Below are positions 1-22,700 of a DNA stretch of 64,000 nucleotides, one piece after another. Numbering within the stretch: position 1 is the first letter of the stretch; each line of letters begins with the position of its first letter. The position numbers were made by a program, and so were the translations under genes. The stretch comes from Haliotis rubra (taxonomy: Eukaryota): positions 1 through 64,000 of the forward strand of contig NW_025766736.1 in NCBI RefSeq assembly GCF_003918875.1, written 5' to 3'. A model generated the notes under the pieces. That model worked only from the letters and a program-made list of their open reading frames with translations, was not told the DNA's origin and ran no database searches.

Positions 1-985
1 CTGAAGATCAATTCTAACCCGGATCTTCACGGGTTATTATAATAATTTCCAGACAATTACGGTTGTGTTGTGAATATGAAACACACAGACTAGCAGAATA
101 TTACGTCCTGAATTCAAGCAAGCTTGTAGGACATGTTTGAAGCAACTTGAACCAACAATACCAGGAAACATCTGACCAGGGAATCTTCAACTTTAAAGCT
201 GAAAAATATGTAATGTAATATTTATGATAAATTCAAGTGATGATGATTTTTATGGAGAAACATGTACAATGTGTATGCCCCCCCCCCCAACATTTATGAA
301 CAAAATAATTGACCACCCACTGCTTGTCATGTACAAAATCAATAACACCCCACCCCCACCCCAATGACCCTAGACCGAACAAAATGGGTGACCCCCCTTA
401 AAATCATCACCACCCCTCCACCCACCCCAGCCAATAATTATGAATGGTCCCCTAGGATAACTAACTGTGGACTAACGGGTTAGTCACGCGGAGGTAAATA
501 TGAATACGTTAACCTGTTATTTAGTTGCATGTTATAAGGAAATTTTTGAATAAAGAGATTTTTATTACAATCGGCAACAAAATCAATAGTAAACACTGAG
601 TTTTCCTTCCTGGGTTTTAATGGAGTGCATCATAGTACTTCGGCTATTATAAACTCTTGCACGTAATTCACGTCAAACAAGATATAAAAACCAAACCCCG
701 ACTGATACACATAAGCCACAAAACGGGAAAAGAACGTTCTGAAATTAACATGGTGATTAAAGAGGAAACGTGTCTTATTCCCAGAATCATCACATGTCGA
801 ATTCTTAGGCAATTTTGTTACTTGCGTTACTTAAATTCAGACACACCATTTTACGTGGAAAACAGTTTTCATTCAGAGAGACATGCACATAATAAACATA
901 TGTTGTTTAATGTGAAAACAGACGTTGCACAAAAAATCAGATTGAAATTGCATATTTCAGTTTTCTCACCAGGATATCCGACGTG

Positions 986-1211
986 ATGTTGCTGCTACTG
1001 TTGTCGCTGGTGTACCTGCCGGGGGTCGTCACCGTCAACAACGATGTTTTGATGGATGGCGATGTGGTCCTCGGGGGACTGTTTAGTGTTCAAGACTATA
1101 CAGAAGGACGCTGTGAGAGTATACTTCCAAGCTCCATAATGACTCACGAAGCGATAAGATGGTTCTTTAAGAAGCTAAATGAACGGAACTACATTTCAAA
1201 TGTCTCCCTGG
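986..1211 (+). CDS. Exon: signal peptide plus start of VFT domain 1 (MLLLLLSLVYLPGVVTVNNDVLMDGDVVLGGLFSV...C...EAIRWFFKKLNERNYISNVSLG)
   Basis: Hydrophobic leader; GDxxLGGLF motif typical of class C GPCR N-termini; upstream acceptor ttttctcaccag at 972; donor G|gtaggt at 1212. Confidence 0.85.
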
Positions 1212-4200
1212 GTAGGTACTTCTTTTTCAAACTCGGTTCCTCCATACAACTGGACTATTAATGAGTGCGTCGTTAAATAACAAAATCAAACTCAAAATAC
1301 AACTGTGTTGGTGAGATATTGCTTTGTTTATATGAAAAAACAACAACATTTATGTATATTATGAAACTGCGTTGTTGAGGTTTTTCTGTAATTTTACGAA
1401 AATAATTATATATAATCTTCATATCCTTAAATATACATATTGCGTTTGACTGGTAATATTTCTAAATACTCATTATCAGTTTTTACAACAAATAACTGAT
1501 GAATAAATGACATATTTGACCTGATTTTTCATGTTAAAGGTTTACATGCATACAAAACCTGCGGTCAGCCCCCTTTGGCGGTAAAGGCGACCATTGCCAT
1601 GAAGAACACATGGGACGGTATATCGAAATTCCAAGGTAAAGCATGTAGATGTCATGACATTTTTCACTTAGCATCTTTGGTCGTCGATTGCAGCATCTGA
1701 TTGCATTGTATATCAAAGTGGTTTTCGTTAATGTTGCCGAGTTCTGTTTCAGGATTGTACCATACCATTGTTTATTCTTAAGTCATTGTTTATTCTTAAG
1801 TCATTGTTCAAGTAAACTTATTCTAAACTTTACACCTCCAGACATCTTTTGGATGAAACTGGATGTGATATGAAATAGGTGGTAATAAATCTATATAGCA
1901 AATGTTGAGCATAAGCGTGAATCAGCATTAAGTTTAGTCTTGGAAATTAGTCTTGAGAAAGGTCGACGGTCACAGCTGCCTCGGGCTCTCTGTCACCATT
2001 TGTTTCAATGATACACACTTCAATAATTAATGCCCACCTACATCATACATACATCTTTCGTGGATGTTATGAGGGACCTTTTTATCAACAAAGAAGAAGA
2101 CTGTCAGGAACATACACCAGACGCCAAAAGAAACGTTACCCTCCTACCTTTATGAATTACATAAAAAGTATCAAAGATATGGTACAAGGTATTAGCTTTA
2201 AAAGAAAGCTTAACAACACAGTTTTATGCAAATCACGAACATAAATTCTCAAATGCATTCATAATTAGATGAAATGCATCAGACTATTATTTTTCGTCCA
2301 TGCCGAAGTAAACCAATAACAGTAATTTAGATGTCCAAAAGAAAGTTTGAAATAAAATTCTGCTTTGGGACAAAGATAAATCATTTAAAATCACCATTTT
2401 TCAACTATTCAAACAAGAAACAACTGTTGTAGAGTGTGTTAAATTGTAAAATTATCATTCCTATGATTTCAGTCTTTTAAAACATTTTCTGCTGATTTGC
2501 ATCAGTGAAAAACAAGTAAAACGTGTCTTTGATATTGTGAAAAAATGTTTAGGAACTTCTACAATGATTTTTGTTAAAATTGTTGCTTACACATAGCAAT
2601 ATCAGTCGCCAAAACGCAGCTATATTCAAGCAGTATTTGCATCCATTTCACATGTAGAATGATTCTATAGGGTATGAATAGAGCCTAGAAAAGATGATAT
2701 GATACACAAGTACGAGAAATATGCCACGGTTAACAGCTGAAGAGAAAGGAAAAGCCACTGGGATGGTGCAGATGGGGGTCGACATACAATGCTGTTGCCA
2801 ACGCCCTCGGATGCCACGGTATCACGGTTATAAAACTTATTCAGGGCTTCAGACAGACTGGAGTCACCGTACACAGACCAAGAAGTGGACGTCCACGCAT
2901 CACAACGTCAGTTGAAGATAGGTACCGCCGTCATTAAGGAAGGAGGGTAGCGTGTCCTTTGGCGTTTAGTGTATTCAGGTGTCTATGCAACAGATTTAGG
3001 GCGTGGGAATAGTGTTTAAATCCTATCAATAAATCAACCCTTTTAGGTGTATAGATGCATGTATGGTAACCCGTCTAGATTAATATACATTGCTAGTAAT
3101 TAATTTCTAGATGCTTCCAGTAATTTCTCGTTGCTTCGAGTATTTTCACAAAACTTGTAATTTCGAGTTTTTGAAAGAAACTTGAAGCAACCTGAAAATA
3201 CTGGAAGAATCGAGAAATTAATTGACGGATCGAGAAAATACTCGAAATTTCAAGTCTTCAAATGCAAAGGAACTTGAATATCGAGAAAATACTCGAAGCA
3301 ACGAGACAATAATCGAAATAACGAGGAAATACTCGGAGCAACGACAAAATAATCGAAGCAAAGAAACTTTTCGCTGAAAATATATTTCATCCCACAAAAG
3401 TGGCAGTTTTAGGCTTTCGTAGATATACAATATCTGGTTCATTATTTCTCATAGCAAATATTTCATAAGAAGTATTGTATACTGATAATGCATTGTGAAA
3501 TCTGATTTTATTAGGAATTGTTGGACCCGGCTTCAGTGCAGAAACTCAGGACGTATCTCGTTTGCTGAGTTCGCTTCCAGAGGAGGATCGTCTGCTGCAG
3601 ATCAGCTACTCCGCCACGGCCGCCATCCTCTCTGACAAGAGTGTCTACAAAAACCTGTACCGGGTCATAGAAACAGATGATGTACAAGTGGAGGTAAGAC
3701 ATCCGACTTGTTATTAATCTTTCCATACGACGAAAAGTCTTCAGAGCTGCACATATATCCTAAGGACTTGATATCACGTCCAGTCACCTACAACCCTTGC
3801 ATACGACCAGATTTTTCCAGCTGTAGCCTCTGAATTCGATGGACGAGATATGACGTCGGGTTTTTTACAATGTTTCCATACGAGGGACGTGATAATTCGT
3901 CTACTCATACTAAACATATTTCACAGTTTTCTAGCCGTGTATCCTCGTCCTTCGAATGCAGTTCGTGTACTTTGTGACAGTGCATTATTTAGGATTTACT
4001 TGATTATCTCCCCTGGTCTATATGGCCTTGATATTCGGTGACCACAGAGCGTTAAATGGCTGGTTGTCGAAAATCGTATCTGACTGTATGCCAAGTTCTA
4101 TCTGCCATTTGCGATGACGAGAGTAGCTGTTACGACGTTTGACGTTTGATTGTTAGCAATGTTCTTTGACTGTTGACTGTTCTTATAGTTGTTACCACAG

Positions 4201-7200
4201 GTAACATTCGTTTCATCGTTGTTTCGATTTGGATGTCATGGCCCAATAATTCTAAGTGATGATATAAATCTACTAAACTGTGGTTGTTCTTCCACCATAG
4301 TGTAGTCACTGGATTAAAGAAATTGTCACAATTACCACACTGCTGTGTAAGTTCCATTATGTTTCTCCTCTTAGAATAAAATGTTTTCCAATGTTTCTGT
4401 GCTAAAGACGACCTATTTTTTCTCTTTTGGTCTGAAATATTTTAATCAAAGTTAATAAAGATGTTTTCAAAAAAAATCAGTTCATATGGATTTTGATGTT
4501 ATGCTAGTCATGAATGGTCCATGTCAACCGTTGCAACCATGGGTTGGTCATATCACGTCCCTCGTATGTAAGTGCCATGTTGCTCGTATTTAAGGGTTGT
4601 GACCCATCAGACGTAATATCTCGTCCTTCGAATGGAAAGAGTTAAGAACTATACATTGGGCTTATGTGACCGTGGTATTCAAACAGGGTAAAGATGGCAA
4701 AAGAGTCTGCAGAAACTGGATCAGAGAATCAGAGATCGCATGAATCACTGGCTGAATTAAGGTTTGTTTGCAAGAATGTCCGTAATGTTTAGCCTATAAA
4801 ACATTTTAAGGTCTTATGCTGACAATCGTGGTGACTCTTTGAATGGAACCAGGTACTAGCTTGTGAGAACAATGCGTAAGAACTTACGACATCGAAACAT
4901 ATGATATGTTCATCTACAAATAGTAGTTAAACTAACTTAAAGAATTTACACAATCATTATAGAGCCAATCATAACAATGATTTAGCTTCGTAGCCTGGGC
5001 CCTTATTCTCGAAACGTTCGTAGCCCTAAGAATTCTTAACTTTGATCGTAGCCAATGTGTTAAGAATGGGCTTAAGAAGTTCGTTGGGCTACGAACGTTT
5101 CGAGAATAGCTAGCCTGGTACGACCATCAATAGCTTAGTGCAATGCCCGTCTGTCTGTGCCATGTGCAGTAGATCGACTAGGAACACTTACTTTTCAGTG
5201 TTGACAGTTAAAATATACCCATCTAGTGAATGATTAGGTAGGTAGCAGTTCTTCTCTTGTTTGAATCCCTTCCTTTTCTATTGCTATACGTCAAATGCAT
5301 TCACACAGGTGAGAGATGAGTCATCCCAAGTCTCGTTCGCTGACATGTTTTTTTAGTTAATATTTGATGTCATAATGCGCTTGGAAGTTAGATGAATAAC
5401 TTAAACAGAAAACAGAAATAGTTAATAATTCAAAACATATGAAATGAAATTTCGGTAATACTTGTATTAGAATAATCAACTGAAATCTGTCATGCAGTGT
5501 ATTATATTTTTCAGCACTTTGCACTTAATCTTGTAAGTTTGCAGAAAACAGTTACAAGAAAAGGTTATTTTTTATAGTAATTATGATTTCCATTTTGCCT
5601 TTTGATATTGTGGTTAATTAGTTAATGACTGTCCAATGAAGGATGCAATAATAAAAAGTAGGTGTCATCGCCTGACGTGGAATGGGAGATATTTATCATA
5701 CATATATATACGATTATATTATGATACAAAATGAAAATCAATATATTCTTGAAACCTACAAGACCGTTGTTGGAATCGAATAAGAATATGCTGATCAACA
5801 AAATGTCAATTTGTGAAACAATAGTCTCGAGTGGTTTTACACGGTTTATGTTTTCATGAAATTAACCAACGGCACGAACTAAATTGAACCCCACAGATGA
5901 CCATCTGTCTTTATCTCGCCGTGTCAAAGTGAGATAAATGTAAACATAAAGAAAGAGCCCCTATTTTCACCAGGAGACACGTTTAAGGGGAGATAACTTG
6001 CTAGGAGGAAACTCTTGTAAAACGCATAGTCTTGTCAATGTGTTGTTATGTTTCGCAACTTCAGAACGCTGAGTCTTTCACACTCATGTATATAATAAAC
6101 AGTTGATATAAGTGCGATACTTATTCACCGGAACACAGCAAATACGCTGAGTAAACAGATTACTTAATATCATATATCATACATTACATATTTTCTTTAC
6201 AGCTTTGATGACAGTTTGAAAAGACAGATACACATTTATTAGAAATGGATACTAATCAAAATAACCATATACGATACCACTGCGTCTTCTCTCTTCCCTT
6301 GTCTTTGTCGATTTCTTATCTGTCAAGTTCTATCACTTTCTTAATCATGATGTCTATACTGTAAATTTTGAATTTTGGAAATACCAGAGATATGTGTTCG
6401 AAGTTGAAGAACTTGTTTCCAATCCCTTTCACATGTGAATAAAAAATGTTTACATCAAATGATTTAAATAGGATTCATTGTGTACAGAATTACAAGTCAG
6501 CATTTATATGGAAATTAATAAACCAGTATGATTGTGTAACGCATGTTATGTATGGGATTACTGACTGACTGACTGAGTTTGGTTTTACGCCCCTTTTACC
6601 AATATTCCAGCAACATCACGGCGGGGGACACCAGAAATGGGCTTCACACATTGTACCCATGTGGGGATTCGAACCCGGGTCTTTGTGTGCTGGAGATTAC
6701 ATGTAGGTGCAGGAGTGTGGGTTCGAATACCGAATGGGACTTAACTCAACAAAAGTACCATTCGTAACTACTCGTGTCATTCCGGCAAGCCGGACTATTT
6801 ACAAGGAAAGATAACTCTGAATTTCCAAACACGGCTACTCCTACAAATTAATAGTACAACACGAAAGTCGCTTTAAGTAAGTTACCTATGTCCTTAGCAT
6901 GTATCAGTAACAAGAAACTTTTATAATCACGGAAATTATAAGGAAAATCGATAATCGCAAAGAAACTATTTGACTCATTTCACCTCTTACTACACGCGAA
7001 TTGATTGGTTTGTAACGATTCTTGGCAATAATGGCGTACTGTACAGGTACGAGTTTTCTTGTGGGTCACGGAAAGAGGCGAGTAGTAACGAATGCAAAAG
7101 TACAAGAATCTGTTACGTCTGACCACTTTCAAAATTACATTGTGTATTCACAGTATAATTGTTATTCTTCTATCCAGATTATGGTTCAGCTGATGAAGTC

Positions 7201-10200
7201 CCTCCAGTGGAACTACATCGCTATTGTGTATGGTGATGACACCTACGGCAGGAAGGAGCCAAACCCTGAAATCCATGGCAGAGAGTCACGGCATATGCAT
7301 ACCCGTGTTCGTACCAATATCTCCGGGATCCGTGAGCGACGAACTACGACAACGCTTTGAGACAATTAAAGATGAGCTTCAAAAGGATTCACAATCGCCA
7401 GTGGTTGGTTTGGCTTTTTTCGGCCAAGCTGAAACTGCCAAAGCGATGTTCGATTACCTTGAGATCGAGCTCAGCAACTTCCAGATGATAGTTTCTGAGT
7501 CCATTGGTGAAAGTGAGTCATATTTGATGAAGTCTGACGGAAGCGTGTACCCATTAGCTAAGGGACTTCTCACCCCAAGTCCTCCATACTATGATGTCGA
7601 GCTGTTCCAACTACACTGGCAGTCGCTTCATACCCAAGGCAATGTTATGCGAGAATACATACAAGATGATGATTGGCTGTTGAAATACATGGAACAAGTA
7701 ACCAAGTGTTCCCTGGCAAATGAAACAAATATTCCACCATCCTGTATTCAACGGTCCACAGATTCAGTACAAAATGCCAAACTCTCCATCTACACCAACT
7801 ACGCACTGATGGCTGCAGCCGCCTTTGCAAAGACATACAAGACATTATATGAGTTGAAATGTCCTCAACAAACAGGTGTATGCAAGGATGTGGATGATTA
7901 TATCTCCAACAAGGCCAAGTTTATTGAGGAAATGGCTGCAGTAGAAGTCAACCCTGTCGTTGAATTTACCGAGCTGTCACCCTTTCGGTTGAAGTTTGGA
8001 TTCAGGAATGGAGAGCTTATGTACACGGAAATGGGAAACTATTCCACGTACATTGTTAACAATTACCAGCAATGCGACACTAAGTTTTGTCATGTGCAGG
8101 TGAGAGAAAATGTGTATACGTTGTTTTGTGTGCGACTTGTGTATGGATGCATGTTTTAGTATTCTTGAGGCTGGATATACCAACTTTTAGAAAGGTTACA
8201 ATAGGATTTTTGTACCAATGGATAAATGGAATTTCAATAATATATAGTCAAAATTGTTAAGACAGCAATATGATTAACTGGGATAACATGAGTGAGTGAG
8301 TGAGTATGTTACACTTTGTACCCATGAGGGGAATCAAACCCGGATCTTCGGCGTGACGAGCGAACGCTTTAAGCAGTAGGCTACCCCACCGTCCCGGCAT
8401 CACATGAGCTATCCATACATATAGAAAGCAAAAATTATTTAATTATTTTCGGATTTATTTCTTTGTTACTGAAACGTCAATTTAATATTCTCCCCATAAT
8501 TGATGAAACAATTCCTATTTGTGAGGTATCATTCACAACCATTCTATTGTAGGTTGCGGATTACGATGGTGCAAACCTGACTGTATCGACGGACCGCATC
8601 AGGTCCTATAGAAGAAATGGTGATGAAGTTATAGGGCCTGTAGCTGCCCAGTGTCAACAGCCGTATACCTGTGATAAGTGCAGTCGAACCATCACCCCTA
8701 CAGATGTGTTATACATTCCTGGAGACTACTACATAGTAGGACTTGTCCCTATCCACAACAAGAAACAAGATGACCCTCTGCAGTGTGGTGAACTACGGAC
8801 CGCCGACAGTGTGGACATTGCAGAAAGTATTTCATTTGCGATTAAGAGAGCCAACTCGCAGAAAACTACATACATATCGGCCTTCGGGGAAAAAACAGTT
8901 GGTTTGGTTCTGATTGACACTTGCAATAATCCCTTTCAGGCTAGAGAACAAATCATACAGTTGCATCGAGGTGAATTGAAATTGTCATCTAAACTTAACA
9001 GTTCCATGCTTGTTAATAGAATAATTGGATACGTTGGGCCATACGGTAGCTCTGTGTCAGTGCCAGTGTCGACTCTCTTGGCTGAGATAGATGAGCTAGT
9101 AATTGCATTTGCTGCAAGCTCTGTTGTCCTCAGTGACAGAACCTTGCATCCGACATTCATGAGACCAGTTTCTCCTGACAACAAGCAAGCTGATGTTATA
9201 ATGCATCTTGCTAAGATTCTTGGTGCCAAGTATGTTCAGATACTGTATACAGATGAAGTGTATGGCATCACGGGGAAGGAAGCGTTAGAAAAGTCCGCAA
9301 AGATCCACAAAGTCTGCATCGCTCAATCTCTTAAGATACTGGATTCAACTGCTTCTTCGAACTCCGTGGGCTACGTTTCTGAGTTGAGGAAGTTTCGCCA
9401 TGCCAGGATGGTTATCGTGTTTGTGAGGTCACACGTGGCACCTATTCTAATGACTGCACTCAATAAGGAGGTAGACAATGGGGAGTTCGTCTTCATTGGC
9501 GGAGAAAGTTGGGGAAAACGTCCACAGGTCCTGACGAATAACTTTCAAATTCGTGGCAGCTTGACCATAGGGCAAGATCTACCGCGGAACACGGCATTTG
9601 AAGACCATTACCGTGAAATTGATCTCGAGCAAACAGAAAACCCATGGCTGCAAGAATACTTAGAAGAACGTAACGAATGCTATTACCCTTTGAGTTTTAA
9701 GAAGAAAAACACACACCAATGTAGCCCTACCGTCTTAGAAGCATACCGTCCGACAGACACATGGGTGCCGTTTGCCATAAATGCTGCGCATGCTCTTATA
9801 ATTGGATTTAATCAAATTCTGGAAGACACTTGCTTTGGGTCTTTCCCAAATTGCCCCGAATATTCCACTGCTAAGCTAATAGAAAAGGTTAAAGCTGTTC
9901 GCCTTGACATGTATTACGATGGCAGAAATGTTCGTGTGTTCGACGACAATGGTGAAGGGAATGTAGCTTACACAATTTATCAGATTATCAGAGAAGGGAG
10001 TGCCCTTAGTTACAAAAGGGTGAGTTTTATTTATTTAATCGTTTAATTTCGTTTACATTGATGTGTATTGCAACTATATGGCGGCGGTCTGAAAGTAATC
10101 GAGTCTGGACCAGACAAACCAGTGAACAACAACATGCGCATCGATCTACGCAGTCTTCTTTTACAAAACCTTTTTTTCTTTTACAAAACCCTTCGAGGTC

Positions 10201-10342
10201 AGATACAAAAGAAAATTTCAGATTGAAATGAGATAACATAAACATGAGAGAGTGAGAGAGAGCGAGAGAGGCAATCATTACACATAAACTGTTGCGTTAT
10301 ATATAGTCTATATATATATAATAGATACTTGGTATATAGATG

Positions 10343-10406
<64 letters not shown>

Positions 10407-13400: not shown

Positions 13401-16400
13401 GATGTTTCTTTACAGATAATATTTTCGTGAACTTTTGTTTCATTGGGAAAAGAGGTCAAGTGGGAGGGTAAATATTCTTTCCCTCAAAGTATCTAATGCT
13501 TTGCAATGAAAAATATAGTGGTATTCATCTGCGATGCTTTTAGAAGTACATAGTTGATTACTGTTCTCTCGTCCCTTTGAATATTTTTCCAGCGGCCTGT
13601 CTCAATAGGTAAACTATGGTTACATGTTCTAAATCCCAATAATGGCAAAGAAATGCGTTTTAGAAGGAGGAGATATACATCAAAATTGGGAAATGGCTTT
13701 AGGTGCTGATAGTGTATACCCTTAGGACTAGAAATAATGTCATTGTGCCAGTTTTGGATAAATTGATCTTTAAGAATATGTTCAACTTTTGAGACCAGCC
13801 ACTGGGTAGTACAAATTGAGGGATTATCAAAACATACGAGAGTCCAGTATTGTCTAATATATTTTTAACGTGCGAGAGCCAGGATTATGTTTTTTTATCT
13901 AATGAACAGTGGCTTCTTACGAGAGAGATATGAGAACACTGTGTAGTCTACTATCAGTGCATGCTTGGAGTTGACAACCAAAACCGAAAGTAAAGCTTCA
14001 TCCATTTCTGGCTTTTCTCATTTGAATTTTCCTTTGCCAGTTTGGGTACTATTCCTCAAACGTACCCCAGTGCTATCACTAATGTAATCAACCCGCGAAG
14101 ATCCTCGATTAGAATTGCTCTTCACTAATCCATGCTTGTCGTAAGAGGGCGACTAACGGGATCAGGTGGTAAGGCTCTACTGAACTTGTTTCCAATCCCT
14201 TTTGGCACATGTGAATAAAAATGTTTACATCAAAATGATTTAAATAGGATTCATTGTGTACAGAATTACAAGTCAGCATTTATATGGAAATTAATAAACC
14301 AGTATGATTGTGTAACGCATGTTATGTATGGATTACTGACTGACTGACTGAGTTTGGTTTTACGCCCCTTTACCAATATCTGTTAGCAACATCACGGCGG
14401 GGACACCCTTAGAAATGGGCTTCTGGCACATTGTAATTCCATGTGGGGATTCGAACTCCGGTCTTTGTGTGCTGAGAATTACATGTAGGGTGCAGGAGTG
14501 TGGGTTCGAATACCGAATGGGACTTAACTCAACAAAAAGTACCATCATTCGTAACTATACTGTGTCATTCCGGCAAGCCGGACTATTTTTACAAGGAAAG
14601 ATAACTCTGAATTTCCAAACACGGCTACTCCCTACAAATTAATGAGTACAACACGAAAGTCGCTTTTAAGTAAGTTACCTATGTCCTTAGCAGCATGTAT
14701 CAGTAACAAGAAACTTTTATATTCACGGAAATTATAAGGAAAATCGATAATCGCAAAAGAAACTATTTGACTCATTTCACCTCTTACTACACGCGAATTG
14801 GATTGGTTTGTAACGATTCTCGGCAATAATGGCGTACTGTACAGGTACGAGTTTCCTTTGTGGGTCACGGAAAAGAGGCGAGTAGTAACGAATGCAAAAG
14901 TACAAGAATCTGTTACGTCTGACCACTTTCAAAATTACATTGTGTATTCACAGTATAATTGTTATTCTTCTACCCAGATTATGGTTCAGCTGATGGGAAG
15001 TCCCTTCCAGTGGAACTACATCGCTATTGTGTATGGTGATGACACCTACGGCAGGAAGGCGGTTTCAAAACCCTGAAATCCATGGCAGAGTCACGGTGAT
15101 ATGCATACCCGTGTTCGTACCAATATCTCCGGGGATCCGTGAGCGACGAACTACGACAACGCTTTGAGACAATTAAAGATGAGCTTCAAAAGGATCACAA
15201 TCGCCAGTGGTTGGTTTGGCTTTTCGGCCAAGCTGAAACTGCCAAAGCGATGTTCGATTACCTTGAGATCGAGCTCAGCAACTCGCGATGATAGCTCTGA
15301 GTCCATTGGTGAAAGTGGAGTCATATTTGATGAAGTCTGACGGAAGCGTGCGTACCCATTAGCTTAAGGGACTTCTCACCCCAAGTCCTCCATACTATGA
15401 TGTCGAGCTCGTTCCAACTACACTGGCAGTCGCTTCCATACCTAAAGGCAATGTTATGCGAGAATATATACAAGATACATGATTGGCTGTTGAAATATTA
15501 ATGGAACAAGTAACGCTGTTCCCCTGGCAAATGAAACAAATATTCCATTCATCCTGTCTCTCTAACGGTCCACAGATTCAGTACAAAATGCCAAACTCTC
15601 CATCTACACCAACTACGCACTGATGGCTGCAGCCGCCTTTGCAAAGACATACAAGACATTATATGAGTTGAAATGTCCTCGCAACAAACAGGTGTATGCA
15701 AGGATGTGGAGGATTATATCTCCAACAAGGCCAAGTTTATTGAGGAAATGGCTGCAGAAGCTCAACCCTGTCGCTGAATTTACTGAGCTGTCAAATTTCT
15801 GGCTGAAGTTTGATTCAGGAATGGAGAGCTGGCGTACACGGAAATGGGAACCATTCCACGCACATTGTTAATAATTACCAGCAATGCGACACTAAGTTTC
15901 CTATTTCGCGCAGGTGAGAGAAAAATGTGTATACGTTGTTTTGTGTGCGACTGGTGTATGGATGCATTGCTCTTTAGTATTCCTTTGAGGCTGGATATAC
16001 CAACTTTTAGAAAGGTTACAATAGGATTTTGTACCAATGGATAAATGGAATTTCAATAATATATAGTCAAAATTGTTAAGACAGCAATATGATTAACTGG
16101 GATAACATGAGTGAGTGAGTGAGTATGTTACACTTTGTACCCAAGGGAAATCAAACCTGATCTTCATGGATTTGTTTAACGCTTTGGCAGTAGGCTACCC
16201 CACCGTCCCGGCATCACATACAGCCATCCATACATATAGAAAGCAAAAAATTATTTAATTATTTTCGATTTATTTCTTTGTTACTGAAACGTCAATTTAA
16301 TATTCTCCCATAATTGATGAAACAATTCCTATTTGTGAGATATCATTCACAACTATCTCTATTGTAGGTTGCGGATTACGATGGTGCAACCTGACTGTAT

Positions 16401-19400
16401 CGACGGACCGCATCAGGTCCCTATAGAAGAAAATGGTGATGAAGTTATAGGCCTGTAGCCGCCCAGCACAAACATGCCGCATACCCGTGATAAGCGCAGC
16501 CGAACCATCACCCTACAGATGTGTTATACATTCCTGGAGACTACTACATAGTAGTAATTCATCCCCATCCACAACAAGAAACAAGATGACCCTCTGCAGT
16601 GCGGTGAACTACGGACCGCCGACAGTGTGGACATTGCAGAGTATTTCATTTGCGATTACAGAGCCAACTCCGCAGAAAAAACTACATATCGGCCTTCGGG
16701 GAAAAAATAACAGTTGGTTTGGTTCCTGATTGACACTTGCAATAATCCCTTTCAGGCTAGAGAACAAATCATACAGTTGCATCGAGGTGAATTCGAAATT
16801 GTCATCTAAACTTAACAGTTCCATGCTTGTTAATAGAATAATTGATACGTTGGGCCATACGGTAGCCCTGTGTTAAAGCAGTAAGTGTCGACTCTCTTGG
16901 CTGAGATAGATGAGCTAGTAATTGCATTTGCTGCAAGCTCTGTTGTCCCCAGTGTGACAGAACCTGCATCCGACATTCAGCAAGGACCAAGGTTTCTCCT
17001 GACAACAAGCAAGCTGGATGTTATAGTGCATCTTGCTAAGATTCTTGAAGAAGTTTTCCAAAAATTATGTTCAGATACTGTATACAGATGAAGTGTATGG
17101 CATCACGGGGAGCGCTGAAGCGTTAGAAAAGTCCCGCCAAAGATCCACAAAGTCTGCATCGCTCAATCTCTTTAAGATACTGGATTCAACTCAAAGCTGC
17201 TTCAGACTCCGTGGGCTACGTTTCTACGGAGGTTGAAGTTTCTGCCATGCCAGGATGGTTATAGAGTGTTGTTTGTGAGGTCACGCGTGGCACCTATTCT
17301 AATGACTGCACTCAATAAGGTGGAGCAATGGGGGAGTTCGTCTTCGACGGCGGAGAAAGTTGGGAGAGAAACGTCCTGAGTCCCCGACGAATAACTTTAA
17401 ATTTCTGCGGCAGCTTGACCATAGGGCGGGTCACCGCGGAACACGGCATTTGAAGACCATTACCGTGAAATTGATCTCCAGCAAACAGAAAACCCCATGG
17501 CTGCAAGAATACTTAGAAGAACGTAACAAATGCTATTACCCTTTGAGTTTAAGAGGACAAACAGCACCGCAAATGTAGCCCTACCGCCTTAGAAGCATAC
17601 CGTCCGACAGACACATGTGGTTGCCGTTTGCCATAAATGCTGCGCATGCTCTTATAATTGGATTTAATCAAATTCTGGAGACACTTGCTTTGGGTCTTTC
17701 CCAAATTGCCCCGAATATTCCACTGCTAAGCTACAATAGAAAGGTTAAAGCTGTTCGCCTTGACATGTATTACGATGGCAGAAATGTTCGATGTGTCTGA
17801 TCATTGACAATGGTGAAGGGAATGTAAAAGCTTACACAATTTATCAGATTATCAGAGAGGGAGTGCCATAGTTACAAAGGGTGAGTTTTATTTATTTAAT
17901 CGTTTAATTTCGTTTCACATTGATGTGTATTGCAACTATATGGCGGGCGGTCTGAAAGTAATCGAGTCTGGACCAGACAAACCAGTGAACAACAACATGC
18001 GCATCGATCTACGCAGTCTTCTTTTACTAAACCTTTTTTCTTTTACAAAACACTTCGAGGTCAGATACAAAAGCAAATTTCTGATTGAAATGAGATAACA
18101 TAAACATGAGAGAGTGAGTGGCGCAGAGCGAGAGGGCAATCATTACACATAAACTGTTGCGTTATATATAGTCTATATATATATAATAGATACTTGGTAT
18201 ATAGATGATATATATATATATGTGTGTGTGCGTGTGTGTGTGTGTGTGTGTTTTCAGTTGCTGTTATGATATATCAATTTGTATAATGTTAACATTCCAG
18301 ATTGGAACGTCTGAAAATGGGGTGCAGTTTGTGGTTTCAAACTTGGATACGTCGTTTGAAGTGGACCTGTCATCTAGTTGTCAGAACGATGTTGACTGTG
18401 GCATATGCTCCAGACAATTCAACAAATCTGGTTTAAGGTAAGATGAATTTGTATCACGTTGCTTCCTTCTGGCCTGACATAGCTGCCATTACAGAGATTG
18501 TGTGACTTATTTACTGTGTTATCACATCATAACAGATTTAGCTGGCGTCCTTGAGGTACACGGTCGAACATTTTAAGGGCATACTCCGTAATACAGCTTT
18601 CGTTGTTAGAGCATTCTGCCCACACAGCTGTCATTGATAGAGAATTCTACTTCACACAACTGTCATTGTTATAGCATTCTGCCCACACAGCTGTCACTGA
18701 TAGAACTTTCTGCCTCACACAGCTGTCATTGATAGAGCATTCTGCCTCACACAGCTGTTACTGATAGAGCATTCTGCCTCACACAGCTGTCATTGTTAGA
18801 GCATTCTGCCTCACACAGCTGTCATTGTTAGAGCATTCTGCCTCACACAGCTGTCATTGTTAAAACATTCTGCCTCACACAGCTGTCATTGTTAAAACAT
18901 TCTGCCTCACACAGCTGTCATTGTTAGAGCATTCTGCCTCACAGAGCTGTCATTGATAGAGCATTCTGCCTCACACAGCTGTTACTGATAGAGCATTCTG
19001 CCTCACACAGCTGTCATTGTTAGAGCATTCTGCCTCACACAGCTGTCATTGTTAGAGCATTCTGCCTCACACAGCTGTCAATGTTAGAGAAATCTGCCAC
19101 ACACAGCTGTCATTGTTAGAGCAATCTGCCTCACACAGCTGTCATTGTTAGAGCATTCTGCCTCACACAGCTGTCAATGTTAGGGCAATCCACCTTGAAA
19201 CAACTGTCATGTTTTCCTGGGATATTGTTCAGCGACCCCGTGAACAGTGACAATGTGCCAGCTATCATTCTTGGCGTGTTCGTGGCTGTGTTGGTGATCG
19301 TGGTCATAGCACTGGTGGTTGTGTTGGTCAAGACGTGTCGTAGAGCAGCTTCCACGGACGGTGAGATATTTGTTTATGGTTTTCACTTTCCCATATAGGT

Positions 19401-22400
19401 TTGTAGATAAACACATTTTAGTTTGCAAAGTATAAAAAGTCGATAATGCCGATGTAATGTAAGTTAATTTCAGTTTCCGTAGAGCATCTAAGTATCTTTA
19501 AATCCAAATATAACATTTTTGTTTGATAAGAATACTCTCTTTTTGTGTTTTGAAGTCATACAGTCATCTCCTTTTATTTTTCTATCACGGGTGCATTCAG
19601 AATAATATAAAAATATTGCAAACATTTCCACAATCACAAAAAGGCTGTGCCAAAAGATGATATTAATAACTCATTGAATCAGGAATATTTTTGTCAAAAA
19701 TAGGAATGATTGTTTGTGGCCATGCCAGTTGTTAAGTTAGAAATATACATGTTATGTCCATCAGTGACAAAGCATGACGTTCTATGTTTTTAAGGTGAAA
19801 CTTGCTTCTGTATTTGTTGGTGATGGGATAAGGTACACTGTCCTTTTCACAGAACATCTGATGCCACCATTGCATTGTTGTAAACTGGAGCACGTGCTTA
19901 TAGTTATAGTCAATCCCCACATGGCCCATTTCTGGTGTGCCCCTCCGTGACTTTGCTCGAATATTGCTAATTAAAAGCGAATACTTAATCAAATCAATCA
20001 ATCAATCAGCCAATCAATCAATCAATATATCAAAATATAGTCATAGTCGTGCAATGGACTATAACAGCTTTTATCATATGCAAGAATTATCTAAAAGGTC
20101 ATCACCCAGGTACTGTAACTATCTTCCACGGGTAGAAATGCTCATTTATTTGAAATAAGCTTATGAGAATTGAATGATGTTTTATGAGTATGTCGAACGT
20201 TTTTGCCTCATCGGTTAATATTTGTTTCTCATATCATACGTTGCAGCATTGGGATCTGGCCAAGGGCGATCATTACCATGAACTTGATCTTGTGGCTCAC
20301 AGTCGATCACCAGCCCAGTGTAAAGGGACCTCCAAAGCCAAACTACTAGGCACGGTGAAATACCAGGTTCCATTTTTCCCACATTTTCCCTACTCACTCT
20401 AAATGCGCCTTTGTGTAATGACACTCGTTATACTGGAGTCGACCAGGGAAGACCAGGATTAGAATTGATCTTCAGTTACCCATGCTTGTCAAGAGGCGAC
20501 TAATGGGATCAGGTGGTAAGGCTCACTGACTTGGTTGACACGTACCACCGTATCCCAGTTTTGTAGATCGATGCTCATGCTGTTGATCACTGGATTGTCT
20601 GGTCAGACTCTTTTATTTACAGACTGCCGCCATACAGCTGAGTGGGGCGAAAAACAACAAACCAAACCAAACCATGCTTGAGTCATGGCGTGCCGGCGAT
20701 TCAAAATACTTTCACGATCTCACATCCCGATGACTTCTAACGTTACTACGCTTATCAAACACGTCTTCACCCACCTTGTCTTCTCTTAAAGCAGATTGAG
20801 TGTATGTAACATGTTTGAGAGCCAGCCACATGTATTGTGCACTCTTTAATTTAGATGAATAAATATTACTGTTCCAATACGTTAATTGAAATTAAAAGTA
20901 AACTTTGAAGTGCGGTCCGCGATAACCAACAATATTAAAGCGCTCGTACAATGCGTTTCTCCACACTGTGCCTCAAAACAATTATTGCTGGAGCATTCCA
21001 GTTCCGTGTCGTCGCTCCGATCATTAACAATTCAATTCAATTTCTTTATTCTCATAAACCACCTTGGTGGTACAAGAGCATATATTGTAAACATATATAC
21101 AAATACAAATCAAATTCAAGATGGCAGTTAACAGCATTTTTTTCTGACAAGAGATGATAGATGTAGGATATATTTTTTGATAAGATTTACTATGTCTCGG
21201 AGATGTTTTACAGATAATATTTTCGTGAACTTTTGTTTCATTGGGGAAAAGGAGTCAAGTGGGAGGGTAAATATTCTTTCCTCAAAGTATCTAATGCTTT
21301 GCAATGAAAAATATAGTGGTATTCATCTGCGATGCTTTTAGAAGTACATAGTTGACAATGACGTTCTCTCGTCCCTTTGGAATATTTTCCAGCAGCCTGT
21401 CTCAATAGGTAAACTATGGTTTACATGTTCTAAATCTCAATAATGGCAAAGAAATGCGTTTTAGAAGGAGGAGATATACATCAAAATTGGGAAATGGCTT
21501 TAGGTGCTGATAGTGTATACCCTTAGGACTAGAAATAATGTCATTGTGCCAGTTTTGATAAATTGATCTTTAAGAATATGTTCAACTTTTGAGACCAGCC
21601 ACTGGGTAGTACAAATTGAGGGATTATCAAAACATACGAGAGTCCAGTATTGTCTAATATATTTTTTTAACGTGCGAGAGCCAGGGATTATGTTTTTATC
21701 TAATGAACAGTGGCTTCTTAGAGAGATATGAGAACACTGTGTAGTCTACTATCAGTGCATGCTTGAGTTGACAACCAAAACCGAAAGTAAAGCCATCCAT
21801 TTCTGGCTTTTCTCATTTGGAATTTTCCTTTGCCAGTTTGGGTACTATTCCTCAAACGTACCCCAGTGGGTAAGGCTCACTGATCATTAACAGTGGCATT
21901 AACATGGCGAGAGATATATGAGCACACTGTGTAGTCTACTATCAGTGCATGCTTGGAGTTGACAACCAAAACCGAAAGTAAAGCCATCCATTTCTGGCTT
22001 CTCTCATTTGGAATTTTCCTTTGCCAGTTTGGGTACTATTCCTCAAACGTACCCCAGTGCTATCACTAATGTAATCAACCCGCGAAGATCCGGATTAGAA
22101 TTGCTCTTCACTAATCCATGCTTGTCGTAAGAGGCGACTAACGGGATCGGGTGGTCAGGCTCACTGACTTGGTTGACATACGTCATCGTTTACAATTGCG
22201 TAGGTTAATGCTCATGAACGCTGTTGATCACTGGATTGTCTGGTCCGGACTCGATTATTTACAGACTGCCGTCATACAGCTGGAATATTGCTGACTGCGG
22301 TGTTAAACAACAAATCAAACCTTAACAAACAAGCGAACAATACAAACAACTAACGTGATCAAAGTCATGGTCAACAAAAGACAGTCATAGCGCTGAAATA

Positions 22401-22700
22401 AGGTCTAGTAACAGAAACTCAATGATACAATTCAAATCGGCTATTGAGCATACTGTTTCAAGTTACATGTAACTGCTCTGCGTTCTTGCGCCCTCTTTCT
22501 TTGTTGTATAAGGTTACATCGAACGTTATATTTCAGTGCAAGGAGAACACACAGTTTCAAATGTGTACCTGACAGCCATCCCAGGAACGCCTGAGCTTCG
22601 AGGTCGGTCCGTTCGTAAACCAGCTGGAGAAGACGGTGAAAACTCTCCCGGTGCAGTGAATGAGAGCATGGTGATCGACGAAGCGGGCACAACAACATAG
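986..22700 (+). CDS. Whole gene model: single-pass membrane receptor with two tandem class C GPCR-type (mGluR/CaSR-like) Venus-flytrap domains, ~1100 aa. Exons 986-1211, 3515-3693, 7178-8099, 8553-10019, 10450-10586, 11575-11702, 12587-12658 (or -12691), 22537-22700
   Basis: All junctions are GT-AG and intron phases join consistently (1,0,0,0,2,1,1). ANF_receptor/VFT motifs occur twice (GDVVLGGLF...GIVGP...ISYSAT...LSDK...WNYIAIVYGDDTYG; GDYYIVGLVPIH...DTC...VGPYGSSVS...LSDR...FMRPVSPD...YG...VCIAQS...FIGGESW...NPWLQEY...FDDNGEG). One apparent -2 frameshift lies near 7255, and an exon is probably missing between 1211 and 3515. Confidence 0.75.
2721..2937 (+). mobile_element. Tc1/mariner transposase N-terminal (paired-like HTH) remnant, frameshifted and truncated
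   Basis: MPRLTAEEKGKATGMVQMG, then after a frameshift in the G run, STYNAVANALGCHGITVIKLIQGFRQTGVTVHRPRSGRPRITTSVEDR. GRPR and TTxxEDR are Tc1 hallmarks. No DDE domain follows. Confidence 0.8.
3515..3693 (+). CDS. Exon of VFT domain 1 (GIVGPGFSAETQDVSRLLSSLPEEDRLLQISYSATAAILSDKSVYKNLYRVIETDDVQVE); absent from the ORF track
   Basis: ttttattag acceptor; GAG|gtaaga donor; mGluR-like VGP..S / QISY.AT / LSDK..Y...R motifs. Confidence 0.9.
3714..4645. mobile_element. Putative non-autonomous DNA transposon (piggyBac-like; TTAA flanks)
   Basis: ttaa-tctttccatacga at the left and tcgaatggaaagag-ttaa at the right; inverted subterminal motifs (catacgagggacgtgata at ~3878 vs tatcacgtccctcgtatg at ~4551). 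Confidence 0.45.
4995..5118. mobile_element. Small MITE / fold-back element (Harbinger-like)
   Basis: Perfect 23-bp inverted repeat, tattctcgaaacgttcgtagccc (5004-5026) / gggctacgaacgtttcgagaata (5086-5108). Confidence 0.6.
7178..8099 (+). CDS. Exon: remainder of VFT domain 1 (IMVQLMKSLQWNYIAIVYGDDTYGRK[GA]QTLKSMAESHGICI...CDTKFCHVQ)
   Basis: tatccag acceptor; CAG|gtgaga donor. ORFs 7022-7360 and 7224-8159 join if two homopolymer bases are restored in aaggagccaaacc (~7253-7265). Confidence 0.85.
8553..10019 (+). CDS. Exon: Cys linker (AQCQQPYTCDKC) plus nearly complete VFT domain 2
   Basis: attgtag acceptor; open frame through ORF 8706-10046; AGG|gtgagt donor; full set of class C VFT motifs. 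Confidence 0.92.
10300..10400. repeat. (TA)n/(TG)n microsatellite (duplicate at ~18165-18250)
   Basis: Directly visible dinucleotide runs. Confidence 0.95.
10450..10586 (+). CDS. Exon: end of VFT2 plus second Cys stub (IGTSENGVQF...SSCQNDVDCGICSRQFNKSGL)
   Basis: ttccag acceptor; AG|gtaaga donor; C-x5-C-x2-C spacing mirrors the first linker. Confidence 0.8.
10745..11552. repeat. 32-bp minisatellite (gcattctgcctcacacagctgtcattgttaga), ~25 copies, intronic
   Basis: 32-bp period visible (e.g. 10921/10953); head-to-tail units with no unique spacers. Confidence 0.95.
11575..11702 (+). CDS. Exon: single transmembrane helix plus stop-transfer (SDPVNSDNVPAIILGAFVAVLVIVVIALVVVLVKTRRRAASTD)
   Basis: ttcag acceptor in phase 2; ~24 hydrophobic residues followed by KTRRR; G|gtgaga donor. 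Confidence 0.85.
12587..12658 (+). CDS. Exon: cytoplasmic tail (ALGSGQGDDYHELDLVAHSRSPAQ); alternative donor at 12692, or read-through to a stop at 12738
   Basis: ttgcag acceptor in phase 1; donors gtaagg (12659) and gtgaaa (12692) are both phase 1. Confidence 0.6.
12777..13010 (+). mobile_element. SINE family B (non-tRNA structured head; duplicate at ~20441-20672)
   Basis: acccg..gaag...ttagaattgatcttcag..acccatgcttgtcgtaagaggcgactaa... consensus shared with more than 10 other copies. Confidence 0.85.
14182..22165 (+). pseudogene. Copy 2 of the duplication: frameshift-riddled copy of five receptor exons (14978-15913, 16368-17880, 18301-18437, 19233-19360, ~20247-20320); likely a haplotype or low-quality-read artefact
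   Basis: Very many 1-3 bp indels, mostly at homopolymers, concentrated in 14.2-18 kb; nearly clean beyond 18.2 kb; a few SNPs and a different minisatellite length. Confidence 0.8.
18598..19210. repeat. 32-bp minisatellite, second copy (~19 units)
   Basis: Same unit as 10745-11552 with fewer copies. Confidence 0.95.
22078..22322 (+). mobile_element. SINE family B, full length
   Basis: Consensus match from acccgcgaagatcc to gctggaatattgctgactgcggtgttaaacaacaa. Confidence 0.85.
22537..22700 (+). CDS. Putative terminal exon of the receptor ((L/V)QGEHTVSNVYLTAIPGTPELRGRSVRKPAGEDGENSPGAVNESMVIDEAGTTT*)
   Basis: ttatatttcag acceptor; phase 1 matches either donor of the previous exon; GC-rich open frame of 53 codons to TAG; single copy, outside the duplication. 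Confidence 0.6.

What the first reader, a model, noticed from the sequence alone, without database searches (positions are those of the whole stretch)
986..22700. Double Venus-flytrap, single-pass receptor: a class C GPCR ectodomain doubled and uncoupled from its 7TM
Seen: the exons splice in phase into signal peptide - VFT1 - CQQPYTCDKC - VFT2 - CQNDVDCGIC - one TM helix - KTRRR - an ~85-95 aa tail - stop. No 7TM, kinase or guanylyl cyclase coding sequence is visible before the next gene. Established: mGluR/CaSR/T1R receptors have one VFT, a nine-Cys domain and a 7TM. Single-pass VFT receptors (natriuretic peptide receptors, Venus kinase receptors) have one VFT and, apart from NPR-C, a catalytic domain. 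Inference: this is a different architecture, possibly a G-protein-independent small-molecule sensor, co-receptor or decoy. It is the best candidate for an undescribed system in this window. I cannot confirm novelty without a database search.
Basis: partly seen in the sequence, partly recalled or inferred. Interest (0 to 1): 0.9.

Follow-up and report, generated by a model that had tools for sequence, protein, structure and literature searches.

The report
Double-flytrap single-pass receptor in abalone
This abalone gene encodes a membrane protein with two glutamate-receptor-like "Venus flytrap" ligand-binding modules, one membrane helix and a short tail; it belongs to a conserved but unstudied mollusc and brachiopod family, and the copy in this window is broken by a frameshift that may be an assembly error.

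Summary
The architecture is real, but the window's own copy is not intact. The window is Haliotis rubra: its exons translate exactly to two separate RefSeq proteins, a 227-aa "GPRC6A-like" and an 884/888-aa "mGluR5-like". They are split because exon 4 lacks two homopolymer bases (at 7250 and 7260). A 99.4%-identical contig of the same assembly has both bases and gives an intact 1145-1165-aa protein.

That protein reads: signal peptide, VFT1, CxxxxxCxxC, VFT2, CxxxxxCxxC, one TM helix, then an 88-103-aa tail. Positions 14182-22171 are a degenerate, indel-riddled tandem copy of exons 4-8. This copy is absent from the other contig and is treated as intron.

Pfam finds only ANF_receptor twice: no NCD3G, 7tm_3, kinase or cyclase. 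Both VFTs are closest to mGluR VFTs and keep the amino-acid-anchoring residues, but not the glutamate-specific arginine.

About 45 of the 150 listed cluster representatives share the 2xVFT+1TM layout, in gastropods, bivalves and the brachiopod Lingula. All that carry a name are "uncharacterized" or "hypothetical". Family tails share a Y[LI]x[PA] motif (38/50 versus 2.5 expected).

A domain tree places the family beside previously unnoticed five-VFT class C GPCRs. I found no published description. Function is untested. The scan's only earlier notes on this architecture lie on this same stretch.

The parts
986..1211 (+). Coding exon 1: start Met, hydrophobic signal peptide (MLLLLLSLVYLPGVV) and the start of VFT1
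   Evidence: Exact reconstruction of P0171; sequence; donor is gtaggt
1540..1635 (+). Exon 2 (VFT1)
   Evidence: Exact reconstruction of P0171; 100% match to P0156 residues 96-128
3515..3693 (+). Exon 3 (VFT1: GPGFS and SYSAT ligand-anchoring motifs)
   Evidence: Pfam ANF_receptor fragment
7178..8099 (+). Exon 4 (rest of VFT1), carrying the -2 frameshift
7250..7260 (+). Frameshift site: two single-base homopolymer deletions relative to the allelic contig (GGG to GG at 7250, AAAA to AAA at 7260)
   Evidence: Alignment of window 1-13367 with L002. RefSeq splits the gene here into P0171 and P0167
8553..10019 (+). Exon 5: end of VFT1, first three-Cys linker (CQQPYTCDKC) and nearly all of VFT2
   Evidence: Pfam ANF_receptor E=1.3e-35; best PDB match mGluR8/5 at 1e-37
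10450..10586 (+). Exon 6: end of VFT2 and second three-Cys linker (CQNDVDCGIC)
10742..11529 (.). 32-bp minisatellite (24.7 copies) in intron 6, ending 46 nt before the TM exon
11575..11702 (+). Exon 7: transmembrane helix (AIILGAFVAVLVIVVIALVVVLV) followed by KTRRR. It is 128 nt long, so skipping it would shift the frame
   Evidence: hydropathy 3.39 in P0156; AF2 helix 1039-1071
12587..12703 (+). Exon 8: tail segment with DDYHEL. Alternative donors at 12691 and 12703, and an earlier donor used in isoform X3
   Evidence: P0167 versus P0169; P0156 tail
14182..22171 (+). Degenerate tandem copy of 6409-14188 (exons 4-8 and introns), frameshifted throughout and absent from the allelic contig; lies inside the last intron
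22537..22700 (+). Exon 9: tail end with NVYLTAIPG (the family's Y[LI]x[PA] motif) and the stop codon

Best explanation
The locus is a Haliotis rubra gene for a type-I single-pass membrane protein of about 1145 aa. Its order is: signal peptide, an mGluR-type Venus flytrap (VFT1), a three-cysteine linker, a second mGluR-type flytrap (VFT2), a second three-cysteine linker, one TM helix, and a disordered cytoplasmic tail of about 90-100 aa with conserved tyrosine motifs.

It belongs to a multigene family found in molluscs and at least one brachiopod. The family shares ancestry with the N-terminal modules of poly-VFT class C GPCRs but has a single helix in place of the membrane-proximal VFT and the 7TM.

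Shown: the architecture, its conservation, the mGluR-type folds, and the absence of NCD3G, 7tm_3 or a catalytic domain.

Inferred: each flytrap binds an alpha-amino-acid-like small ligand other than glutamate itself. The three-Cys linker is a remnant of the cysteine-rich domain that is disulfide-locked to lobe 2. Ligand-driven closure or re-packing of the flytraps is then read out through the tail's Y[LI]x[PA] and YxxL tyrosines, by phosphotyrosine docking or by sorting, or through a partner protein, rather than through a G protein.

In this window the ORF is cut by a -2 frameshift, and its last intron holds a degenerate 8-kb tandem copy. Both are absent from the allelic contig. They are more likely assembly or polishing errors than biology.
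For: Identity and exon chain:
- Exact translation to RefSeq proteins.
- An intact allele, LOC124274715 (1145-1165 aa), sits on L002, which is 99.4% identical over 13.4 kb.
- Intact orthologues: H. asinina 1138 aa, H. cracherodii 1129 aa, H. rufescens 1130 aa.

Domains:
- Pfam finds ANF_receptor twice and nothing else.
- The best PDB sequence hits are all mGluR VFTs: 1e-38 for VFT2 and 1e-27 for VFT1.
- The AF2 model has mean pLDDT 85.5 and pTM 0.76, with two flytraps, a helix at 1039-1071 and a disordered tail.
- Foldseek TM-score by target is up to 0.89 against mGluR ligand-binding domains.

Family:
- About 45 of the 150 listed 50%-identity cluster representatives have 2 VFTs plus one strong TM at about residue 1000-1065, with tails of 17-385 aa that carry no Pfam domain.
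- Lingula anatina LOC106158345 is a member.

Ligand site, across 58 family members (alignments; mGluR3 site list in PMC3206071):
- VFT2 keeps Ser 51/58, Thr/Ser 54/58, Asp 43/58, Tyr 56/58 and Glu/Asp 52/58.
- VFT1 keeps Ser/Thr 48/58, Thr/Ser 53/58, Tyr 51/58 and Glu/Asp 52/58.
- The Arg that binds glutamate's side chain is replaced by Thr in VFT1 and Ile in VFT2.

Cysteines: 12 + 10, so all can pair within the chain. C228 and C750 sit in the 'ICI/VCI' position, which in mGlu2 bonds to the cysteine-rich domain (the mGlu2 bond is from my own knowledge).

Tail: Y[LI]x[PA] occurs in 38 of 50 tails, against a mean of 2.5 and a maximum of 10 in 1000 shuffles. It sits at variable distance from the membrane and in both deep clades. 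It is absent from the last 110 residues of 19 poly-VFT relatives checked, most of which carry a 7TM.

Origin: VFT1 is sister to module 1 of the five-VFT GPCRs (98/86). VFT2 is sister to their modules 2-4 (95/96).
Against: - No expression, binding or signalling data exist for any member.
- The window's own allele is frameshifted. If that is real, this haplotype is a null.
- The Asp208-equivalent in VFT1 is poorly conserved (18/58), so VFT1 may not bind an amino acid.
- The tail-motif statistic does not correct for relatedness among the sequences.
- The motif also fits non-signalling roles such as sorting or endocytosis.
- The disulfide assignment was not checked on coordinates.
- The signal peptide and TM helix were judged by hydropathy and AF2 only; no SignalP or TMHMM was available.
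Confidence: 0.55

Rival explanations
1. Non-signalling binder. The protein acts as a decoy, a clearance or scavenger receptor (as NPR-C does for natriuretic peptides), or an auxiliary subunit. As a subunit it would pair through its flytraps with 7TM-bearing class C receptors, including the poly-VFT ones, and tune their ligand response. The tail tyrosines would serve endocytosis or sorting only.
For: There is no catalytic domain, and tails are short, disordered and poorly conserved apart from one short motif. Some members have tails of only 17-26 aa (P0004, P0160, P0012, P0038). From established knowledge, class C VFTs dimerise and heterodimerise. The closest relatives by the domain tree are 7TM receptors present in the same phyla.
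Against: The conserved motif is Y[LI]x[PA] rather than the classical YxxPhi endocytic signal: YxxPhi shows 35 against 26 expected, only weak enrichment. Some subfamilies have tails of 260-385 aa, which is long for a pure anchor.
Confidence: 0.3
2. At this particular locus the gene is a real pseudogene or null haplotype. On this reading the -2 frameshift and the degenerate tandem duplicate are genuine features of one H. rubra haplotype, and only the other haplotype encodes the receptor.
For: The frameshift is in the deposited assembly, and RefSeq annotated two separate genes around it. Copy 2 is a mosaic at sites that distinguish the two haplotypes (20 like copy 1, 12 like L002, 4 neither). It also carries 261 private substitutions, which is more than simple mis-joining of a polished haplotype would give.
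Against: Both frameshifting changes are 1-nt losses in homopolymers, 10 nt apart. Away from that site, exons 1-8 stay open and differ from the intact allele by only 14 substitutions (exon 9 lies beyond that alignment but also reads open). Copy 2 has about one indel per 2.3 substitutions, and 73% of its 1-nt indels lie next to the same base. That looks like unpolished long-read sequence. The allelic contig has neither feature.
Confidence: 0.35
3. Gene-model artefact. On this reading the true transcript continues into a 7TM or catalytic domain elsewhere, and the single-pass form is only a truncated prediction.
For: Relatives with 2-5 VFTs plus 7tm_3 exist.
Against: No 7TM-like coding sequence exists anywhere in the 64-kb window. 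The stop codon, TM exon and tail are conserved in models from four Haliotis species and in about 45 divergent representatives with the TM at the same position. In the domain tree the family is separate from the module that precedes the 7TM (module 5).
Confidence: 0.03

Closest known systems
Class C GPCRs of the mGluR group (mGluR1-8)
   Same: Both flytraps are mGluR-type by sequence (E 1e-27 to 1e-38) and by fold (TM-score up to 0.89). They keep the conserved Cys pairs, the Ser/Thr/Tyr/acidic amino-acid-anchoring residues, and the lobe-2 Cys that links to the cysteine-rich domain.
   Different: There are two VFTs in tandem. The nine-Cys NCD3G domain is replaced by a CxxxxxCxxC stub, and there is one TM helix instead of 7tm_3. 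The glutamate-specific Arg is missing. No unpaired Cys is left for a covalent dimer.
Poly-VFT class C GPCRs (five ANF_receptor modules + 7tm_3, about 2800 aa; e.g. Argopecten XP_069135753, Tubulanus XP_074641006, Physella XP_059178375). No description found in the papers searched.
   Same: They are the nearest relatives in the domain tree: VFT1 is sister to their module 1, and VFT2 is sister to their modules 2-4. They share the tandem-VFT principle, and Pfam reports no NCD3G in them.
   Different: They keep a fifth, membrane-proximal VFT and the 7TM. Their C-tails lack Y[LI]x[PA].
Venus kinase receptors (VKR; PMC2680970, PMC3703292)
   Same: An invertebrate single-pass receptor with a class C-like VFT that is activated by amino acids.
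   Different: VKRs have one VFT and an intracellular insulin-receptor-like tyrosine kinase. Here there are two VFTs and no kinase.
Natriuretic peptide clearance receptor NPR-C
   Same: A single-pass ANF_receptor-family protein with a short non-catalytic tail.
   Different: NPR-C has one VFT of the NPR type and binds a peptide at the dimer interface. The VFTs here are mGluR-type, present in two copies, and have small-ligand pocket residues.
SmGBP, the truncated mGluR of Schistosoma mansoni (PMC3206071)
   Same: An mGluR-derived flytrap without a 7TM that is membrane-associated; it shows that such truncated forms can be functional binders.
   Different: SmGBP is 488 aa with one VFT, no Cys linker, no C-terminal TM and no tail, and it keeps the glutamate-binding Arg68.
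BvgS/EvgS bacterial sensor kinases (PMC4352136, PMC5573083)
   Same: Two tandem VFT domains outside the membrane, joined by one helix to a cytoplasmic output.
   Different: They are bacterial, with a different periplasmic-binding-protein subclass and a histidine-kinase output. This is an analogy only.

Membership tests
Class C GPCR (mGluR/CaSR/T1R) | Seven-transmembrane domain (Pfam 7tm_3) | tested here: not met
   No 7tm_3 hit in P0156 or in 14 other family members. Only one strong hydrophobic segment is present. There is no 7TM-like coding sequence in the window.
Class C GPCR (mGluR/CaSR/T1R) | Nine-cysteine domain (Pfam NCD3G) between the VFT and the membrane | tested here: not met
   No NCD3G hit at E<=0.01. 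Only a three-Cys CxxxxxCxxC motif follows each VFT.
Class C GPCR (mGluR/CaSR/T1R) | Bilobed VFT (ANF_receptor) of the mGluR type | tested here: met
   ANF_receptor found twice, E=8e-62. The best PDB matches are mGluRs. Foldseek gives TM-score up to 0.89.
Venus kinase receptor | Intracellular tyrosine-kinase domain | tested here: not met
   No kinase Pfam hit in any member, including those with tails of 260-385 aa.
Natriuretic peptide / guanylyl cyclase receptors, including NPR-C | A single NPR-type VFT, with or without a kinase-homology and cyclase domain | tested here: not met
   There are two VFTs. The 60 best PDB sequence matches shown are all class C VFTs (mGluR, CaSR, T1R), none an NPR. 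There is no cyclase domain.
2xVFT single-pass family (unnamed; Haliotis LOC124274715 and relatives) | Two tandem ANF_receptor modules, each followed by CxxxxxCxxC | tested here: met
   The window encodes both modules and both motifs. The Cys columns are conserved in 51-56 of 58 members.
2xVFT single-pass family (unnamed; Haliotis LOC124274715 and relatives) | A single C-terminal TM helix followed by basic residues and a non-catalytic tail | tested here: met
   Exon 7, hydropathy and the AF2 helix.
2xVFT single-pass family (unnamed; Haliotis LOC124274715 and relatives) | Tail motif Y[LI]x[PA] | tested here: met
   NVYLTAIPG is encoded in exon 9. The motif is in 38 of 50 family tails against 2.5 expected.
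2xVFT single-pass family (unnamed; Haliotis LOC124274715 and relatives) | Uninterrupted ORF through all exons | tested here: not met
   The window has a -2 frameshift at 7250/7260. The allelic contig L002 is intact.
Truncated mGluR / SmGBP type | A single VFT with no Cys linker, no C-terminal TM and no tail | tested here: not met
   This protein has two VFTs, Cys linkers, a TM and a tail. The SmGBP description is in PMC3206071.

The most novel reading that the evidence does not exclude
The 2xVFT single-pass proteins are a lophotrochozoan class of G-protein-independent chemoreceptors. On this reading the two flytraps bind dissolved amino acids or related metabolites, and the conserved tail tyrosine (D/P-Y-[LI]-x-P, reminiscent of receptor-tyrosine-kinase docking sites for SH2 proteins) is phosphorylated by an associated cytoplasmic kinase. 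This would be a third way, besides the 7TM and an intrinsic kinase, of coupling a class C flytrap to the cell. Together with the five-VFT GPCRs they would define an unrecognised poly-flytrap branch of class C receptor evolution.
Probability: 0.2. Interest if true: 0.8.

Novelty: new variant of a known kind. Interest (0 to 1): 0.58.

Why it matters
Class C flytraps are a textbook example of a ligand-binding module coupled to different outputs: a 7TM, a tyrosine kinase or a guanylyl cyclase. A conserved family with two such modules in tandem on a single helix, and with no enzymatic output, adds an architecture that recent surveys of class C domain organisation do not list (PMC12716839, PMC6307864).

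The relationship to five-flytrap GPCRs shows that arrays of flytraps are an old, conserved design. That raises testable questions about how closure of stacked flytraps is transmitted to the membrane.

For molluscs, amino acids are major feeding and settlement cues, so these are candidate chemosensory or nutrient-sensing receptors with aquaculture relevance.

The case also shows how homopolymer indels and false tandem duplications in long-read assemblies split a real gene into mis-named fragments ("GPRC6A-like", "mGluR5-like").

Tried and rejected
- Word-index protein searches gave only Haliotis, Patella and Potamilus hits, so they could not map the family's taxonomic range: P0001, the 30-sequence family profile A1 and P0065.
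- Exact-sequence contig look-ups failed for P0156, P0074 and P0128. They succeeded for P0166, P0104, P0088 and P0065.
- The Logan contig for P0176 covers only the large exon 5 and is genomic, so it gives no splice evidence.
- Six literature searches and three papers read in part found no description of two-VFT single-pass or poly-VFT class C proteins. The library is incomplete, so this is absence of evidence only.
- The reading that transcripts run on into a 7TM was rejected.
- A tiny intron as the cause of the frame change at 7250-7260 was rejected: there is no GT...AG there, and the allelic contig simply has two more bases.
- The idea that copy 2 is a mis-placed read of the other haplotype was not supported cleanly, because copy 2 is a mosaic at informative sites.
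- A classical YxxPhi endocytic signal as the conserved tail feature was rejected as the main signal: 35 observed against 26 expected.
- AFDB and ESM Atlas fold searches returned double-VFT clusters but without organism names, so they were not used for taxon claims.
- dN/dS was not computed, because no orthologue CDS was fetched.

Full report
**What is in the window**

The + strand between 986 and 22700 carries a nine-exon gene. Spliced at canonical GT/AG sites, exons 986-1211, 1540-1635, 3515-3693 and 7178-7360 translate exactly to RefSeq XP_046572234.1, a 227-aa "G-protein coupled receptor family C group 6 member A-like" protein of Haliotis rubra. Exons 7446-8099, 8553-10019, 10450-10586, 11575-11702, 12587-12703 (or -12691) and 22537-22700 translate exactly to XP_046572233.1 and XP_046572232.1, the 888- and 884-aa "metabotropic glutamate receptor 5-like" proteins.

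**Why it was split**

Inside exon 4 the frame changes after ...IAIVYGDDTYGR. A second contig of the same assembly (L002; QXJH01001936.1, 88.8 kb) is 99.4% identical to window 1-13367, introns included. At this spot it has GGG and AAAA where the window has GG and AAA, at window 7250 and 7260.

With those two bases the reading is ...YGREGAKTLKSMAESHGICIP..., and the gene (LOC124274715) gives 1145-1165-aa isoforms. Apart from this, exons 1-8 of the two contigs differ by 14 substitutions only. Intact orthologues exist in H. asinina (1138 aa), H. cracherodii (1129 aa) and H. rufescens (1130 aa).

It is right for the gene as found on the sister contig and in related species.

**The tandem copy**

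Window 14182-22171 repeats 6409-14188, that is exons 4-8 with their introns. The copy differs by 325 substitutions and 142 indels, and 73% of its 1-nt indels sit next to the same base. Every exon in it is frameshifted.

L002 runs from the equivalent of 13367 straight to the equivalent of about 21875, so it has no second copy. At sites that distinguish the two contigs, copy 2 is a mosaic: 20 like copy 1, 12 like L002 and 4 neither. It also has 261 private substitutions and 120 private indel events.

I read the indel-rich, homopolymer-biased profile as unpolished long-read sequence, which would make this a false duplication. I put that at about 0.65, and the same for the frameshift. A real haplotype-specific degenerate duplication is not excluded. 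Either way it is non-coding and lies in the 9.8-kb last intron.

**The protein**

I used the intact allele P0156 (97% identical to the window's exon 5 product, and 89-100% across all exon-level matches).
- Pfam finds ANF_receptor twice (E=8e-62) and nothing else: no NCD3G, no 7tm_3, no kinase, no cyclase.
- Hydropathy shows one strong segment at 1041-1059, followed by KTRRR.
- AlphaFold2 on a 58-sequence family alignment gives mean pLDDT 85.5 and pTM 0.76. The model has two alpha/beta flytraps, a helix at 1039-1071 and a disordered tail.
- Foldseek matches each flytrap to mGluR ligand-binding domains, with TM-score by target up to 0.89.
- By sequence, VFT2 hits mGluR8/5 at 1e-38 and VFT1 hits mGluR3 at 1e-27. 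CaSR and T1R score far lower.
- No 7TM-like coding sequence exists anywhere in the 64 kb. The ORFs just downstream are retroelement debris.

**Ligand pocket**

I used the printed alignments to mGluR8 and mGluR3 and the mGluR3 site list Arg68/Ser151/Thr174/Tyr222/Asp301 quoted in PMC3206071.
- VFT1 has Ser135, Thr162, Tyr210 and Glu295.
- VFT2 has Ser661, Ser684, Asp704, Tyr732 and Glu813.
- The arginine that holds glutamate's side-chain carboxylate is Thr73 in VFT1 and Ile584 in VFT2.

Across 58 family members these anchoring positions are well conserved. In VFT2: Ser 51, Thr/Ser 54, Asp 43, Tyr 56 and Glu/Asp 52. In VFT1: Ser/Thr 48, Thr/Ser 53, Tyr 51 and Glu/Asp 52. The arginine position is never basic in the majority. 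This agrees with an earlier first-reader note on the same stretch (s1-345066). I infer alpha-amino-acid-like ligands other than glutamate.

**Cysteines**

The ectodomain has 12 + 10 cysteines, nearly all conserved. They include the mGluR-like pairs and, in each flytrap, the lobe-2 Cys of the ICI/VCI motif (C228, C750). From my own knowledge of mGlu2 (Rondard et al. 2006), that Cys bonds to the cysteine-rich domain.

After each flytrap comes CxxxxxCxxC (C529/535/538 and C1011/1017/1020). I infer that this is a stub of the cysteine-rich domain, with one Cys tied to lobe 2 and the other two paired locally. I could not inspect coordinates to check this.

**Tail**

The tail is 88-103 aa depending on alternative exon-8 donors.

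The three closest orthologues share DDYHEL-type and xYLTA[IV]PG motifs. Family-wide, Y[LI]x[PA] occurs in 38 of 50 tails, against a mean of 2.5 and a maximum of 10 in 1000 shuffles. It lies 8-242 residues from the membrane and is often preceded by D/P. YxxPhi is barely enriched, at 35 against 26. The motif is absent from the last 110 residues of 19 poly-VFT relatives checked, most of which carry a 7TM.

From memory, [DE]-Y-L-x-P resembles SH2 docking sites of receptor tyrosine kinases, such as EGFR Y992. That is a lead, not a test. The shuffle control also does not correct for relatedness among the sequences.

**Family and origin**

A full HMMER scan with the VFT2 exon found 2070 proteins at E<=1e-3. 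Of the 150 best 50%-identity cluster representatives, about 45 have two VFT matches, one strong TM at about residue 1000-1065, and tails of 17-385 aa with no Pfam domain. Named members come from Haliotis (at least 5-6 paralogues per genome), Patella, Nucella, Batillaria, Babylonia, Potamilus, Solemya and the brachiopod Lingula anatina. All are labelled "uncharacterized" or "hypothetical".

The same scan revealed proteins of about 2730-2870 aa with five ANF_receptor modules followed by 7tm_3. They occur in Argopecten, Physella, Octopus and the nemertean Tubulanus. Four-, three- and two-VFT versions with a 7TM occur in Saccoglossus and Branchiostoma. One five-VFT protein sits as an uninterrupted ORF on a 9-kb Logan contig, so it is probably a transcript.

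In a maximum-likelihood tree of 72 individual VFT domains:
- The five modules group by position across phyla.
- VFT1 of the single-pass family is sister to module 1 (support 98/86).
- VFT2 is sister to the clade of modules 2-4 (95/96).
- Module 5, next to the 7TM, lies apart.

The tandem flytrap therefore predates the split. The single-pass family most simply arose by replacing the membrane-proximal flytrap and 7TM with one helix. The root is a midpoint root, so the direction of change is an inference.

**What is known**

Six full-text searches and partial reading of three papers found the following:
- Venus kinase receptors.
- The truncated schistosome mGluR SmGBP.
- Bacterial tandem-VFT kinases (BvgS, EvgS).
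- Two broad surveys of glutamate and class C receptor evolution. The class C survey (PMC12716839) lists only ANF+NCD3G, ANF alone and Cache+EGF ectodomains; the glutamate-receptor survey (PMC6307864) makes no mention of tandem, truncated or single-pass forms.

None of these describes two-VFT single-pass or poly-VFT receptors. The library is incomplete, so this is not proof of novelty.

**Verdict**

The architecture is real, conserved and apparently undescribed. It is a new variant within the flytrap-receptor superfamily, not a new kind of system. Function is inferred only. The window's own copy is interrupted, probably by assembly error.

Noticed in passing
Not in the window: proteins P0005-P0008, P0010, P0013, P0024, P0031, P0032; P0079 = locus L001: These are class C GPCRs with five tandem Venus-flytrap modules before the 7TM (about 2800 aa). 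They are conserved module-by-module across molluscs and a nemertean. Four-, three- and two-module versions occur in a hemichordate and in amphioxus. I found no paper describing them. Their C-tails often carry Y-[DES]-N motifs.
   Followed up: partly
This could instead be the single five-VFT receptor gene. I did not check it.
   Followed up: no
window 14182-22171: An 8-kb degenerate tandem copy of 6409-14188, absent from the allelic contig L002. Its error-like indel profile suggests a false duplication in the assembly.
   Followed up: yes
window 10742-11529 (and 18593-19213 in copy 2): A 32-bp minisatellite of 24.7 copies at 92% match, in the intron just upstream of the TM exon. A (TG)22 microsatellite lies at 10356-10400, 50 nt upstream of exon 6.
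   Followed up: partly
window 27270-30200: A large 61-bp minisatellite block. It is also present, with a different copy number, in the allelic contig (L002 43011-45566).
   Followed up: no
window 25145-25954 (-): An ORF with a zf-RVT match (E=6e-6), lying among overlapping long ORFs at 24818-26648. This is probably retroelement debris downstream of the gene.
   Followed up: no
window 59999-60493 (-): A 164-aa ORF with a class I SAM-dependent methyltransferase domain (Methyltransf_11, E=3.5e-16); probably an exon of the next gene.
   Followed up: no
L002 1-5097: A paralogue (LOC124274716, 1110 aa, flagged LOW QUALITY PROTEIN) lies head-to-tail upstream of the intact allele, so the family is tandemly arrayed. 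H. rubra also has a long-tailed subfamily member (P0104, 1424 aa, on L003).
   Followed up: partly
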